A stretch of 64,000 bases of DNA, taken from NCBI GenBank assembly GCA_964019335.1, contig OZ025653.1, positions 372,001 to 436,000 on the forward strand, written 5' to 3'. The position numbers and the translations under genes were made by a program. The notes below the pieces were generated by a model. It worked only from the letters and a program-made list of their open reading frames with translations, did no database searches and had not been told where the DNA came from. This DNA is from Diplonema japonicum (Eukaryota; Protista; Euglenozoa: Diplonemea). Positions 3,816 through 51,432 of this stretch are shown here, one piece after another (position 1 is the stretch's first letter; every line of letters starts with the position of its first letter).

Positions 3816-4275
3816 TAGCTATTTATTGCCAACAAATAATGAGTCATTATTTAACTCGAGTTCCCGAATTTTTGCACGAGGGCCCTGCGGGCCCTCGTGC
3901 TAAAAAACAGTAACGAGTGTTAAATAATGGCTCATTTGGCGGCAAGTAAGTCGTTTTATTTTTTCACTTTTCGTCATTTGAGTCACTCACTCTTCACTGC
4001 TTTCACTGCTGTTTTTTTTTTCACGCAGGTCAGCTTTTTGGGGATTTTCCTAAGGTAATACAGGGTAGCTATTTCGCCGTGGCATTTAAAGTGAACACTG
4101 CACCACCAATGATACGTCGCAACCTAAAGGACACCAACGGTCTTCGGGCCTGGAGCTTTTTCCATCAATAATTCGTGGACGGGCACGCCCCACGAAAAAA
4201 AAAGGGATGCTGTCCCTCATCGGGCTCATAATTTAACTCCGTGTGAGAAATTTGGTAACTTGTGTTAAATTACTT
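3816..4275 (+). mobile_element. Crypton-like non-autonomous element A (hairpin end intact, distal end not found)
   Basis: Starts TAGCTATTTATT. Terminal hairpin has a perfect tip, gcacgagggccc-tgc-gggccctcgtgc (3874-3900). 3930-4091 is nearly identical to element B (13396-13552). Right boundary is uncertain. Confidence 0.75.
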
Positions 4276-4598: not shown

Positions 4599-5332
4599 TT
4601 TTATATAACTCCAGTCAGATTTTCAAGGGTGGGAGTGAATATAATATTTCACATTATTTCACGCTTCACTTTTCAGGCTTGTTTTAGGAAGAAAACAGGG
4701 GCAGAAATGAAAATTACTTTATGAGTGAATATAAAGTACTTTATATTCACGCTAGCCCTATTTTCACTGCACAGCAAGGGGTCGGGGGCGAAAACACGGA
4801 AAAGGAATCACCTAAGTGGTAACCACACAGGCCCTTGTTTTGGAAACCCCGGTTCGAATCTGGGAATCTCACTTTTTACGTCACTCAAGGATCTGGTCGC
4901 CTCTCTCAACAGAAGGGGAGAGAGGTGGGCTTGGCAAGCCAGCAGCGGTGACAGCTGCTAGTGGGGCAACCTCAGCAACCCAGGCAGCAGCCCCACAGGT
5001 CCAGACCGAGGTCCTGTCAGCACCCATGGACGCACAGCCCGCACCACACAGGATATGCCTTGACAATCAATATCAACCATAAGCACCCCCAATAAAATTT
5101 GTAACTTGTAACTTGTAACCTGTAACCCCACCCTTTCAAATCTGACTGACGTTAAATAAAACAACGGATTTAGTGAAAATAGATCCGATTTTCACTTGTG
5201 GTGGCATGTTTAACTTGTTGATGTTACTTCACTCGCTTCACGAGCGAAGCGAGTGAAGTCATATACACTCGTTAAACCACTGCCACCACGCGTGAAAATC
5301 ATACGGTCTTATTTTCACTAAATAAATAGTTA
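4599..5332 (-). mobile_element. Crypton-like non-autonomous element C (same subfamily as E)
   Basis: Ends in AATAAATAGTTA, the reverse complement of the family terminus. Hairpin at about 5168-5325; long-range IR 4599-4634 vs 5128-5161; hairpin and IR align with element E. Confidence 0.85.
4806..5095 (+). pseudogene. Possible decayed C-terminal part of a tyrosine recombinase (NHLSGNHTGPCF..GSNLGISL...TININHKHPQ*)
   Basis: HTGPCF is two single-base changes from the YTGHCF box. It is followed by GISL, an Ala/Thr-rich tail and a TININ end. It reads toward the hairpin end, like the remnants in D and E. Confidence 0.4.
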
Positions 5333-5377: not shown

Positions 5378-6112
5378 TGGCTATTATTAAATGAAAATCA
5401 GATAGCCTGATTTCACTTGTGGGGTCCCCTTTTTGACGAGTGATTTTACTTCACGAGCGAAGCGAGTGAAATAAAAAAACGAGTCAAAAGGGGACCCCAC
5501 AAGTGAAATCATGCTCTGATTTTATTCAATACTGCATTTTATTTAATGATGAGCTGCTCTCGAAAAGAATTTAGGTGCTAAGTGTGGCTTCGCTGCTGCC
5601 TGCTTGTAGCGGCGCAATGCGCGAGTCTTTACTGAACACGGTACTGGGTTTGGCATGATCAATTCGGCGAATTGATGTTGACGTTTATGTCAAACGTGAT
5701 TCTGTGCAGTGCTGAAGAAGTGGGCTGTGTCGAAGGGGGTAGGGCTGAAGGGGGCGTGGGTTTGATCGAGTGGTAGGTGCAAAACCTCTCTCACTCCTTC
5801 TTATAGGCATTTTGCTTGCCGTTGGAAGCGTGTCTTCCATCACAGCTTTAGCCTCTTTCTCGAGGCTGATGCCCTTGGCTCGCTTCCCGGTCGCCTTCGG
5901 TTTTCTTCCCATTTTGCTAGAAATGACTGTGGGCGTGAAATAAAGTACCTGATTTTCACGCCCAGCAAAATCAGCAACGTTTGGCTTAAAAACATGAGGA
6001 AAAAAATCGATACTTTATTTCACGCCCAGGTCTGAGCGTGAAATAAAATGAAACCTGATTTATATCTTCCGGCCTAAATTCTTTGAGAGAGCTGCTCAGA
6101 ATTAAATTAAAA
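5378..6112 (+). mobile_element. Crypton-like non-autonomous element D
   Basis: Starts TGGCTATTATT. Hairpin tip is ttcac-GA-gc-GAA-gc-GA-gtgaa (5450-5470). Long-range IR 5537-5575 vs 6073-6112; poly-A flanks. Confidence 0.85.
5659..5912 (-). pseudogene. Internally deleted remnant of a Crypton-type recombinase ORF (N-terminus plus C-terminal tail)
   Basis: Reads MGRKPKA...EKEAKAVMEDTLPTASK, then after a frameshift AYKKE*ERF, resembling the LP-x-S-K-x-Y-x3-W-x2-F N-terminal motif I recall for Crypton recombinases. Ends ITFDINVNINSPN*. Confidence 0.55.
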
Positions 6113-13369: not shown

Positions 13370-13852
13370 TAACTATTTATTGCCAACAAATAATGGCTCA
13401 TTTGGCGGCAAGTAAGTCGTTTTATTTCACTCTTCGTCATTTGAGTCACTCACTCTTCACTGCTTTCACTGCTGTTTTTTTTCACGCAGGTCAGCTTTTT
13501 GGGGATTTTCCTAAGGTAATACAGGGTAGCTATTTCGCCGTGGCATTTAAAGGGGAAGTAAGGCACTTATTCCCACTTTTAAGGGCTGGAATGGCCTCAG
13601 ATGGCCAAAAATAGTCAAAATACCCCCACCCCAAAAAAATTTTTCAAGGGGTTGGGTGCATTTTTTTCCACGACAAGACCCATTTTTTCACTCTGAAGGG
13701 CCATTATTTAACTGCAAAATCTCATTATTTAACTAGTTAAATAATGGCGATTTCGCGTTAAATAATGGCCGTTTCGCGTTAAATAATGGCCATTTCGCGT
13801 TAAATAATGAGGCCCCTAGTGAGTGAAGAAAATGACGAAGAGTGAAATAAAA
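13370..13852 (+). mobile_element. Crypton-like non-autonomous element B (subfamily of A; hairpin core deleted)
   Basis: Starts TAACTATTTATT. Perfect 23-bp IR 13420-13442 vs 13830-13852, extended across a GA/GA mismatch. High identity to A; A-tract flanks. Confidence 0.85.
13736..13809. repeat. 21-bp tandem repeat (GTTAAATAATGGCnnTTTCGC, about 3.5 copies) inside element B
   Basis: GTTAAATAATG at 13736, 13757, 13778 and 13799. Confidence 0.9.
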
Positions 13853-50672: not shown

Positions 50673-51379
50673 TAGCTATTTATTAAGTGAAAATAAGATA
50701 GCATTATTTCACGCGTGGTGGCAGGGGGTTTAACGAGTAGGGATCTTAGTTCACTCGCTTCGCTCGTGAACTAATATCCTGTTTACTTCACGAGCGCAGC
50801 GAGAGAAAAGTAAAAAGCTACGAGTTAAACCTGCCACCACAAGTGGAATAATGCTCTTATTTTCACTAATACGTTGTTTTATTTAACAAGAGCCGGGTTT
50901 GAAAGGTGGGAGGTTACAGTGAAAAGTAGGATTTGGGTTACAGGGTGTGGGAGATACACCGTCGCTAAATTTCAGTTTGTGCGACTCTTTGTCCTCATCC
51001 CGCTTGCAAACATGCAAGCTGCATATGCCTGACGCACTATGTTGTAGGGGTCGCTGAATTCCATTCAGATACTCTTTCATTTGTTTCTGACTAAACACCA
51101 AAGCTTTTTTTCACCTCATGGACTTCTTCAAAAGAAGTGCAACCCTGGGAAAGCTCTGCATTTTTTTACCGAAGTTTCGTTGGATGATGTAACTTGCCCT
51201 AAACCTAGGTGAAATAGGTGAAATTAGGCCCAGGAGTGAAATAATGTTACATTATTTCACGCTCGAACATTATTTCACTCGTGGGCCTAATTTCAAGGTA
51301 ACTGGGAGTGAAAATAAAGCTGGGAGTGACATTGAGTAAAATCTTATTTTCACTCCCACCCTTGAAAACCCGGCTCGAG

Positions 51380-51389
<10 letters not shown>
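50673..51389 (+). mobile_element. Crypton-like non-autonomous element E with a Y-shaped terminal hairpin
   Basis: Starts TAGCTATTTATT. Two-armed hairpin; IR 50877-50911 vs 51354-51389; carries a tyrosine recombinase fragment; poly-A right flank. Confidence 0.9.
50961..51194 (-). pseudogene. Frameshifted central fragment of a Crypton-type tyrosine recombinase
   Basis: Stitched across frameshifts it reads SYIIQRNFGKKMQSFPRVALLLKKS/HEVKK/ALVFSQKQMKEYLNGI/SDPYNIVRQAYAACMFASGMRTK/ESHKLKFSD, which contains the YR box-I pattern G-x-R-x2-E-x3-L. Confidence 0.75.

Positions 51390-51432
<43 letters not shown>

What the first reader, a model, noticed from the sequence alone, without database searches (positions are those of the whole stretch)
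50673..51389. Crypton-like tyrosine-recombinase DNA transposon family in a probable euglenozoan, with complementary recombinase fragments in different copies
Seen in sequence: five elements (A 3816, C 4599-5332, D 5378-6112, B 13370-13852, E 50673-51389) share a TRRCTATT(T)ATT terminus and a terminal hairpin. B, C, D and E also have an asymmetric inverted repeat and an A-tract at the far end, with no evident TSD. E holds a frameshifted fragment with the YR box-I pattern (SGMRTK/ESHKL) preceded by KK-x2-VF and PY-x-VR. D holds the probable ORF N-terminus and C-tail. C may hold a decayed YTGHCF box plus the tail. All three remnants read toward the hairpin end. Established: Cryptons are eukaryotic DNA transposons encoding tyrosine recombinases, while the trypanosomatid YR elements I know (VIPER, TATE) are retroelements. 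Inference: these are deletion derivatives of an autonomous Crypton-like element. I am not aware of one described in this lineage, and the family assignment rests on recalled motifs.
Basis: partly seen in the sequence, partly recalled or inferred. Interest (0 to 1): 0.9.

Follow-up and report, generated by a model that had tools for sequence, protein, structure and literature searches.

The report
Hairpin-ended tyrosine-recombinase transposons in a diplonemid
The 717-base repeat is a worn-out, shortened copy of a small DNA transposon that moves with a Cre-like tyrosine recombinase, a kind I found no report of in this protist lineage, and it has an unusual conserved DNA hairpin at one end.

Summary
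E (50673-51389) is one of at least 30 full-length copies (80-93% identical). It is a double-deletion derivative of a ~1.6-kb element (three copies on contig C69) whose only gene is a tyrosine recombinase (YR), there frameshifted. Sister families include an intact 378-aa YR (Pfam PF00589; model best matches Cre) in ~1.66-kb copies up to 99.7% identical at the DNA level.

All families share this order: A-tract flank | TRRCTATTTATT | 120-185-nt imperfect hairpin | inner inverted repeat | YR gene reading toward the hairpin | family-specific 9-10-nt repeats | right end ending in AAA. There is no target duplication. A contig from another sample skips one intact copy, resuming at the first base after the 12-nt terminus.

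The host is a diplonemid, very probably Diplonema japonicum, whose transcriptome holds an intact YR of one family.

By the operational definition these are Crypton-like elements. Placement among named Crypton groups could not be tested, and DUF3504 is absent.

New here: every hairpin keeps strand-specific CGAG/CGAG tandem G·A mismatches, and the apex loops flip between copies.

Other first readers of this scan noted the same system elsewhere in this genome.

The parts
50673..51389 (+). Element E: non-autonomous copy, a double internal deletion of the ~1.6-kb E-type YR element
   Evidence: At least 30 full-length copies at 80-93% identity. Blocks 1-273, 288-517 and 529-717 are collinear with L057:2683-1081.
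50673..50684 (+). 12-nt terminus TAGCTATTTATT shared by all families; with the flank's AAA it forms the palindrome AAATAGCTATTT
   Evidence: 593 genomic matches to TRRCTATTTATT against 13 for the control. Junctions of 30 copies.
50686..50867 (+). Composite imperfect hairpin (long stem plus two apex arms)
   Evidence: -57.4 kcal/mol, z = -12.7. Conserved across 28 copies.
50734..50737 (+). CGAG, 5' half of the conserved tandem G·A 2x2 internal loop (partner at 50821-50824)
   Evidence: The same CGAG/CGAG loop is present in the E, D, A/B and G-type hairpins. CGAG outnumbers CTCG on this strand.
50821..50824 (+). CGAG, 3' half of the tandem G·A internal loop
50741..50779 (+). Apex arm 1: 14-bp stem around an 11-nt centre, TCGCTTCGCTC here and inverted to GAGCGAAGCGA in other copies
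   Evidence: (I14).
50782..50814 (+). Apex arm 2: stem around GAGCGCAGCGA (contains GCGCAGC), inverted in other copies
50874..50912 (+). Inner inverted repeat (IR-L), a reverse complement of the right end. Together with the preceding AATACGTTG it looks like a degenerate inverted copy of the end-to-end junction.
   Evidence: I2, I10. The same layout is seen in the B, C and D families.
50946..51200 (-). Frameshifted remnant of the YR gene (end of the N-terminal domain through box I Arg, ...ACMFASGMRTK/ESHKLKFSD)
   Evidence: tblastn against E-type and other YR ORFs. 98 genomic matches to the intact 84-aa frame.
51209..51353 (.). Right subterminal block: six of E's nine GTGAAA(A)TAA-type motifs, in both orientations, including the palindrome 51219-51295
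   Evidence: 9 motif copies in E against 0.016 expected. I1. Only sub-threshold miRNA-like Rfam hits.
51353..51389 (+). IR-R and right end ...CCCGGCTCGAGTTATATAAA(A)
51390..51432 (+). Flanking A-tract (target)
3816..4091 (+). Element A: truncated left part (terminus, hairpin, IR-L) of a B-type derivative
   Evidence: 85% identical to L042:1056-1283. Hairpin with a CGAG/CGAG loop.
4599..5332 (-). Element C: non-autonomous member of a family related to E (terminus TAACTATTTATTTAGTGAAAATAAG); keeps only the ...TININHKHPQ* tail of the ORF
   Evidence: 89.6% identical over 402 aligned bases to a copy at L031:3070-3471.
5378..6112 (+). Element D: 735-bp non-autonomous family (about 30 copies cover most or all of the 735 bp at 76-97%), variant terminus TGGCTATTATT; remnants of the ORF start (MGRKPK...) and tail (FDINVNINSPN*)
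13370..13852 (+). Element B: deletion derivative of the intact ~1.66-kb B-type element; hairpin apex deleted
   Evidence: 88-94% identical to the ends of L042, L043, L045 and L037.

Best explanation
E and its neighbours A-D are members, mostly internally deleted and non-autonomous, of a superfamily of compact (~1.6-1.7 kb) DNA transposons in a diplonemid genome. Their only gene is a two-domain, Cre/Xer-like tyrosine recombinase.

Shown:
- the repeat families and their sharp ends;
- the YR gene with a complete catalytic set;
- E as a deletion derivative of a YR-coding element;
- insertion into A-tracts without target duplication;
- an allele in another sample that lacks one intact copy;
- transcription of one family.

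Inferred: the recombinase excises the element as a circle in which the right end (...AAA) abuts TRRCTATTTATT. It then integrates by site-specific recombination between that junction and an AA(A)-containing A-tract. The short A run therefore appears on both sides, which is the Crypton model. The family-specific 9-10-nt repeats in the hairpin arms and the right subterminal region are the likely recombinase-binding sites. The hairpin is a conserved cis element whose role is open. The window's E copy is an old fossil: its family's known recombinase genes are broken.
For: Copies and ends.

YR remnant in E.

E-type ~1.6-kb element: it has GMR, GHSYRRS and INEY boxes in three frames, and E is collinear with it.

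Intact B-type ORF: 378 aa in copies that are 99-100% identical at the protein level, and 99.7% at the DNA level for L042 versus L043. It matches PF00589 at 4.8e-9. R142, K169, H249, R252, W275 and Y284 are invariant or nearly so in 40 homologues. The AlphaFold model has pLDDT 85.8 and best matches Cre over 316 columns (E 1.9e-11), then XerH and IntI. The element holds no second gene.

Target: flank A at -1/-2 in 94-97% of 78 insertions, and right ends stop in AA(A).

Empty allele: an X8 contig joins L043:650-738 to 2432-2647, and 2431 is the last base of the terminus.

Transcription: P0001 from the D. japonicum transcriptome is an intact YR, 95-97% identical to genomic copies.

Motif repeats: 9, 6 and 6 copies against less than 0.02 expected.

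Related YR-only proteins sit on 1.1-2.0-kb contigs, and the few with organism names come from animals.

The Crypton model, a short terminal motif matched in the target, was confirmed in Chlamydomonas (PMC9977147).
Against: - No circle junction or excision footprint was seen. Only assembled contigs could be laid, which hide rare forms.
- The 31 letters inside the empty-allele contig could not be read, so the right-hand crossover point is not fixed.
- One intact copy (L042) is flanked by a 17-bp direct repeat, which a simple conservative crossover does not predict.
- Kojima and Jurka found no terminal repeats in animal Cryptons, whereas these elements have inverted repeats and a hairpin.
- The core site (binding elements and overlap) could not be defined from sequence.
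- Every sampled E-type, and L031-type (G-type) genomic YR copy is broken.
Confidence: 0.8

Rival explanations
1. Same YR elements, but recombination or replication goes through a folded single strand. In this reading the hairpin on the strand beginning TRRCTATTTATT is the functional substrate, like integron attC or CTX-phage attP. Alternatively it is a second-strand origin for a single-stranded circle, rather than a duplex accessory site.
For: Every family keeps symmetric CGAG/CGAG tandem G·A loops on one strand at about 42 and/or 60-63 nt from the terminus, although the surrounding stems differ. CGAG outnumbers CTCG about 1.6- to 14-fold on that strand, depending on family, in the 84 hairpin modules scanned. 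Between families, stem changes are compensatory (E AAAATAAG/CTTATTTT against AATATAAG/CTTATATT). Distant relatives in other organisms also have rows of tandem purine mismatches on one strand. The apex arms contain GCGNAGC, and their centres invert in place, which suggests the arms extrude. IntI is among the structural matches.
Against: There is no direct evidence for single-stranded intermediates. There is no orientation bias of E copies relative to flanking ORFs (23 against 20). Imperfect palindromes are also simply more stable in duplex DNA. Two CGAG motifs in direct orientation could be read by a protein on duplex DNA. The apex loops occur in both orientations, so that part is not strand-specific.
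Confidence: 0.2
2. The compact elements are retroelement derivatives. They would be copied by the RT of the VIPER/DIRS-like elements in the same genome and then integrated by YR, with the inner inverted junction acting like a DIRS internal complementary region.
For: YR+RT elements exist in this genome (L038-L040). The inner junction after the hairpin resembles an inverted copy of the joined ends.
Against: The compact elements carry their own intact YR and no RT. Their YR gives no BLAST match to the L038-L040 YR. Homologues elsewhere sit on 1.1-2.0-kb contigs with no room for an RT.
Confidence: 0.04
3. Helitron2/Helentron-like or other HUH rolling-circle element (asymmetric terminal inverted repeats, a hairpin near one end, no TSD).
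For: The end architecture is superficially similar.
Against: Full-length relatives with the same ends encode only a YR. No Rep/helicase is present in the 1.6-1.7-kb elements.
Confidence: 0.01
4. A MITE of a DDE transposon, or a poly(A)-tailed retroposon (SINE-like).
For: Short non-coding copies, an A-tract at one end, and one copy with a 17-bp flanking repeat (L042).
Against: There is no TSD in the other copies examined. The A-tract lies on the side where the ORF starts, so it is not an mRNA tail. If the 31 unread letters in the empty-allele contig comprise the 21 nt of adjoining flank plus about 10 T, the A-tract pre-exists in the target. The autonomous partner encodes a YR.
Confidence: 0.01

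Closest known systems
Cryptons (YR-only eukaryotic DNA transposons; Goodwin et al. 2003; Kojima & Jurka 2011, PMC3212892; active CryptonF-1_cRei, PMC9977147)
   Same: The single gene is a tyrosine recombinase, with no RT and no TSD. A short sequence at one terminus, here AA(A), is matched in the target. Non-autonomous deletion derivatives outnumber autonomous copies.
   Different: These elements have a 12-nt conserved terminus, a 120-185-nt hairpin with conserved G·A mismatches, subterminal repeats and an asymmetric inverted repeat. The Crypton descriptions I read mention none of these. The target is an A-tract. There is no DUF3504 or GCR1_C domain. The host is a diplonemid. Phylogenetic placement was not tested.
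Cre/loxP, XerH/dif and IntI (simple two-domain tyrosine recombinases)
   Same: The predicted fold matches Cre over both domains, and the catalytic R-K-H-R-W-Y set is complete.
   Different: 16% sequence identity. The gene is eukaryotic and transposon-borne. The core site is undefined.
Integron attC and CTX-phage attP (folded single-strand YR substrates)
   Same: An imperfect hairpin whose strand-specific mismatches are conserved while the stems vary.
   Different: The hairpin is much longer. No single-strand evidence exists. The crossover lies about 13 nt outside the hairpin, at the terminus.
DIRS1 / VIPER / TATE (YR retroelements; VIPER and TATE are the YR elements reported so far in Euglenozoa, PMC6681497)
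   Same: They encode a YR, lack a TSD, and have an internal sequence that mirrors the joined termini.
   Different: The diplonemid elements have no RT/RNase H and are about 1.6 kb, and their YR is not closely related to the genome's own YR+RT elements.
Helitron2/Helentron
   Same: Asymmetric terminal inverted repeats, a hairpin near one end, and A/T-rich insertion sites without TSD.
   Different: Those elements encode a Rep/helicase (HUH) and use rolling-circle transposition. Here the gene is a YR.
Parvovirus/AAV terminal repeats (resemblance only)
   Same: A T-shaped composite hairpin with small arms found in alternative 'flip/flop' orientations.
   Different: Here only the 11-nt arm centres invert, each on its own. 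The hairpin is internal to a chromosomal element, and no Rep is present.

Membership tests
Tyrosine recombinase superfamily (Phage_integrase, PF00589) | Pfam domain above the gathering score | tested here: met
   B-type 36.7 bits and L044 41.9 bits against a cut-off of 27.1. 32 genomic matches, best 71.4 bits. 40 of 40 homologues match.
Tyrosine recombinase superfamily (Phage_integrase, PF00589) | Catalytic R-K-H-R-(H/W)-Y residues | tested here: met
   R142, H249, W275 and Y284 are invariant. K169 and R252 are at least 90% conserved in 40 sequences. The E-type has GMR, GHSYRRS and INEY.
Tyrosine recombinase superfamily (Phage_integrase, PF00589) | Two-domain Cre/Xer-like fold | tested here: met
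   pLDDT 85.8. Cre 3crx_A at E 1.9e-11, TM 0.59/0.67, 316 columns.
Crypton (operational definition) | A DNA transposon whose only enzyme is a YR; no RT or RNase H | tested here: met
   The 1.66-kb L042 element holds one 378-aa YR ORF and nothing else of 100 aa or more, except an antisense frame inside the YR ORF.
Crypton (operational definition) | No TSD; a short direct repeat shared by one terminus and the target | tested here: met
   AA(A) lies before the terminus and at the right end in 94-100% of copies, with no longer repeat. One exception is L042.
Crypton (operational definition) | No terminal inverted repeats or long repeats (as described for known Cryptons) | tested here: not met
   An asymmetric inverted repeat of 33-39 nt, a terminal hairpin and subterminal repeats are present.
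Crypton (operational definition) | Excision as a circle and site-specific reintegration | tested here: inconclusive
   An empty-site contig was seen. No circle junction appeared among the joints shown, but only contigs were available.
CryptonA (animal group and its domesticated derivatives) | YR region recognised by DUF3504 (PF12012) | tested here: not met
   No DUF3504 hit in the ORFs or in 40 homologues. The best genomic hit is 18.6 bits, below the cut-off, and lies elsewhere.
CryptonF/S/A/I clades | Phylogenetic clustering of the YR with reference Crypton sequences | not testable with these tools
   No Repbase references were available. The nearest Atlas clusters are eukaryotic YR-only proteins (Arthropoda 0.98, some with DUF3504 or ALOG).
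DIRS/VIPER/TATE retroelements | RT/RNase H encoded with the YR | tested here: not met
   Absent from the compact elements and present only in the separate L038-L040 elements.
Helitron2/Helentron | Rep (HUH) plus helicase gene | tested here: not met
   Full-length relatives encode only a YR.
Folded-ssDNA YR substrates (attC-like) | Strand-specific conserved mismatches in an otherwise covarying hairpin | tested here: met
   CGAG/CGAG loops in all families. Compensatory stem changes between families.
Folded-ssDNA YR substrates (attC-like) | Recombination of a single folded strand | not testable with these tools
   Needs biochemistry or strand-specific detection of intermediates.

The most novel reading that the evidence does not exclude
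These are the first eukaryotic tyrosine-recombinase transposons whose essential cis element is a folded single DNA strand. In this reading the long hairpin, with its conserved tandem G·A (CGAG/CGAG) mismatches and GCGNAGC mini-hairpin arms, is recognised in single-stranded form, either as an attC/CTX-like recombination partner or as the second-strand origin of a single-stranded circle. The module also appears to be ancient: distant relatives in other organisms carry a similar hairpin.
Probability: 0.2. Interest if true: 0.88.

Novelty: new variant of a known kind. Interest (0 to 1): 0.62.

Why it matters
The YR elements reported so far in Euglenozoa are retroelements (VIPER, TATE). The only DNA transposon reported in kinetoplastids is Merlin. 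The D. papillatum genome paper lists only unclassified transposon-like ORFs (TATE-, MULE- and Helitron-like).

This system adds a YR-only DNA transposon superfamily to that lineage. It has roughly 600 ends in 62.5 Mb, near-identical intact copies, transcripts, and a site that is occupied in this assembly but empty in a contig from another sample.

It is also unusually easy to read for a Crypton-like element. It has sharp ends, a defined target (an A-tract), candidate binding repeats, and a 378-aa Cre-like enzyme. That makes the poorly understood Crypton mechanism testable, and possibly usable as a small eukaryotic recombinase with its own site.

The conserved strand-specific hairpin features raise the question of single-strand recombination in a eukaryote. 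A-tract targeting also matters for this genome, whose intergenic regions and introns are A-rich.

Tried and rejected
- The search for homologous proteins with the intact YR returned nothing. The exhaustive profile search was needed.
A single-protein query gave two contigs.
- The DUF3504 search was negative.
- I suspected that overlapping termini (AATAAATAGCTATTTATT at C14 and C17) were head-to-head element pairs sharing a TAGCTA crossover. They are single insertions whose flank happens to be AATAAA, so that idea was dropped.
- A test for orientation bias of E copies relative to flanking ORFs found none (23 against 20).
- I looked for circle-junction joints in laid contigs and saw none among those shown.
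- A first regex count of arm orientations was unreliable and was redone on the alignment.
- Rfam gave only sub-threshold miRNA-like hits on the palindromes.
- I could not define a canonical core site (two inverted binding elements around a 6-8-bp overlap) at the joined ends from sequence alone.

Full report
**What is at the coordinates**

Window 50673-51389 reads, left to right:
- an A-rich flank, then TAGCTATTTATT;
- a long imperfect palindrome (50686-50867);
- a 33-39-nt segment (50874-50912) that is the reverse complement of the far end;
- about 250 nt of decayed coding sequence;
- a block of GTGAAA(A)TAA-type repeats in both orientations;
- the end ...CCCGGCTCGAGTTATATAAA(A), followed by a 40-odd-base A-tract.

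A is truncated at about 4091. B has lost the top of its hairpin. C lies in reverse.

**It is a repeat family with sharp ends**

E has at least 30 full-length copies in the 62.5-Mb assembly at 80-93% identity. Aligning their junctions puts the left boundary at T/AGCTATTTATT and the right boundary at GAGTTATATAAA(A) in almost every copy. D has about 30 copies that cover most or all of its 735 bp, at 76-97% identity. The 12-mer TRRCTATTTATT occurs 593 times in the genome against 13 for the reversed control. It heads several families whose next bases differ: AAGTGAAA (E), GCCAACAA (A/B), CCGGGGCA (here called G-type, the L031 family), TAGTGAA(A/T) (C and relatives) and AAATGAAA (D-like).

**The coding remnant is a tyrosine recombinase**

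In other E copies the internal frame is open for 84-87 aa. It aligns at 34-36% identity (E about 1e-9) to recombinase ORFs elsewhere in the genome, including box I (ACMFASGMRTKESHKL against ACMFSGGMRACEVVSM). The window copy carries frameshifts and a stop.

A genome search with that peptide found three identical ~1.6-kb copies on contig C69, plus a truncated one on C102. These are collinear with E in three blocks, so E arose by two internal deletions. The C69 copies encode the whole recombinase (GMR, GHSYRRS, INEY), but in three frames, so it is broken.

**Intact relatives**

The A/B family has ~1.66-kb copies (L042, L043, L045, L037). L042 and L043 are 99.7% identical at the DNA level. The 378-aa ORFs in L042, L043 and L045 are 99-100% identical. 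The ORF reads toward the hairpin.
- It matches PF00589.
- R142, K169, H249, R252, W275 and Y284 are invariant or nearly so among 40 homologues.
- An AlphaFold model (pLDDT 85.8) is most similar to Cre over both domains, then XerH and IntI.
- The element has room for no other gene.

A PF00589 scan gave 32 genomic matches. Among them is a separate YR+RT (VIPER/DIRS-like) element, L038-L040, which is not closely related.

**Host**

The best match of a profile of these recombinases among 1.84 billion proteins is a 285-aa protein from the Diplonema japonicum transcriptome (EukProt). It is an intact G-type recombinase, 95-97% identical to genomic copies. A 39-nt spliced-leader-like sequence lies next to L042. 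I recognise it as euglenozoan from memory only.

**Relatives elsewhere**

The profile search gave 9,358 hits at E of 0.001 or better, and 172 at 1e-30 or better. The best-scoring hits are mostly 300-450 aa. Those looked up mostly sit on contigs of 1.1-2.0 kb, and the few with names are animal hypothetical proteins from a firefly and a coral. All 40 tested carry PF00589, ten also carry an N-terminal SAM-like domain, and none carries DUF3504. The protein atlas places the ORF nearest to eukaryotic YR-only clusters: arthropods first, with some cnidarian and mollusc clusters that carry DUF3504 or ALOG.

Two contigs of a distant relative (30% identity to the B-type ORF) show the same order of hairpin, inner repeat, gene and outer repeat. 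There the gene reads away from the hairpin.

**Target and boundaries**

In 78 distinct insertions the flank is A at -1 and -2 in 94-97%, and A at -3 to -6 in 77-83%. E's right end stops in AA(A) and usually runs into more A. Apart from this shared A run there is no duplication.

Logan contigs from another sample (run X8) include one that joins L043:650-738 to 2432-2647. The element's terminus ends at exactly 2431. This allele lacks the intact copy, and it fixes the hairpin-side boundary. The 31 letters between the two matched parts could not be read, so the other boundary is only approximate.

The first base of the terminus is T in about 91% of copies and A or C in the rest. This suggests the crossover straddles it.

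**Mechanism**

These facts fit the Crypton model. In that model the element is excised as a circle, and a short terminal sequence recombines with a near-identical target. The model was confirmed for an active Chlamydomonas Crypton (PMC9977147; PMC3212892). Here the shared sequence is the A run.

This step is inferred. No circle junction was seen, and only assembled contigs could be laid.

The family-specific 9-10-nt motifs occur 9, 6 and 6 times in E, B and D, against less than 0.02 expected. They lie in the hairpin arms and in the right subterminal region. They are the obvious candidates for recombinase binding.

**The hairpin**

It folds strongly as DNA: E at -57.4 kcal/mol (z = -12.7) and the B-type at -41.9 (z = -8.1).

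1. In E, D, A/B and G-type hairpins the predicted fold contains one or two symmetric 2x2 loops, 5'-CGAG-3' opposite 5'-CGAG-3'. They lie about 42 and/or 60-63 nt from the terminus (D's second lies at 77), while the stems around them differ between families. On the strand that starts with the terminus, CGAG outnumbers CTCG about 1.6- to 14-fold depending on family. A perfect palindrome would give equal numbers. Between families the stems change by compensatory substitutions.

2. E's apex has two arms, TTCAC-N11-GTGAA, whose 11-nt centres contain GCGAAGC or GCGCAGC. Among 11 two-armed copies the centres are inverted in place, independently: RR 4, YR 3, YY 3, RY 1. R stands for the purine-rich orientation on the terminus strand and Y for its reverse complement; the first letter is arm 1. 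From memory, d(GCGAAGC) is a very stable DNA mini-hairpin, and loop inversions of this type mark hairpins that extrude in vivo.

3. The segment after the hairpin is a degenerate inverted copy of the joined ends in every family.

These points suggest, but do not show, that a folded single strand is functional.

**Rivals**
- An HUH or DDE partner is excluded by the coding content.
- A retroposon reading is contradicted by the lack of TSD, by the ORF running away from the A-tract, and, if the 31 unread letters of the empty-allele contig include about 10 T, by an A-tract already present at the empty site.
- RT-dependence in trans is unlikely.

**Unexplained**

L042 is flanked by a 17-bp direct repeat.

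**Novelty**

I found no report of YR-only DNA transposons in kinetoplastids or diplonemids, and no report of hairpin-bearing Cryptons. Other first readers of this scan flagged the same system in other windows of this genome. None of the notes returned carried a follow-up check.

Noticed in passing
L038, L039, L040 (G000:C74:84573-88007, C114:137502-140936, C25:460679-464113): A separate GC-rich element family with a YR ORF (about 545 aa open frame) and, in L040, a downstream RT-like ORF (393 aa). It looks VIPER/DIRS-like and is not closely related to the compact elements.
   Followed up: partly
L042:985-1055 and 2717-2740: A 39-nt spliced-leader-like sequence (reverse strand) lies directly beside an intact B-type element. 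That element is flanked on both sides by AAAGGGGGACTTGAGAA, a 17-bp direct repeat not seen at other copies.
   Followed up: partly
L042:1-880 (start of contig C36): A long tandem repeat, read as MRVCGFAGL... in all three forward frames, lies near the contig start. It was not examined.
   Followed up: no
window 50741-50814 and the same region of L001-L030: The 11-nt centres of the two apex arms of the E hairpin are inverted in place, independently, among copies; all four combinations occur. Many copies have instead lost the region between the arms.
   Followed up: yes
L101:290-520 and L102:30-200 (contigs JAAUXV010002448.1, JAAUYM010029031.1): Distantly related YR elements from another organism have a long hairpin with a row of tandem purine mismatches on one strand. 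They also have inner and outer inverted repeats (TTTAACATCATGACTGCCCTTATTT), but the gene reads away from the hairpin.
   Followed up: partly
L010 (G000:C52), right end of the E copy: The E right end abuts the left end of a C-type element directly (...TTATATAAAA|CTATTTATTTAGTG...). The neighbour's first bases are replaced by A, so elements insert at each other's A-flanked termini. In L007 an E copy sits at the A-rich right end of a D element.
   Followed up: partly
L023:1391-1440 (G000:C94): An E copy truncated at position 111 abuts a sequence that looks like a tRNA gene (GGGGCGTTTAGCTCAGTGGAAGAGCGCC...). It was not checked with ARAGORN.
   Followed up: no
window 51219-51295: A second palindrome (30-nt arms, 97% complementary) is built from the GTGAAATAA repeats. 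It gives only sub-threshold matches to miRNA-precursor models.
   Followed up: yes
window 1-64000: Most of the ORFs of 200 aa or more (27 of 38) lie on the minus strand, and most plus-strand ones overlap them, which is consistent with one long polycistronic unit. The intergenic regions are full of long A, T, C and G homopolymer runs.
   Followed up: no
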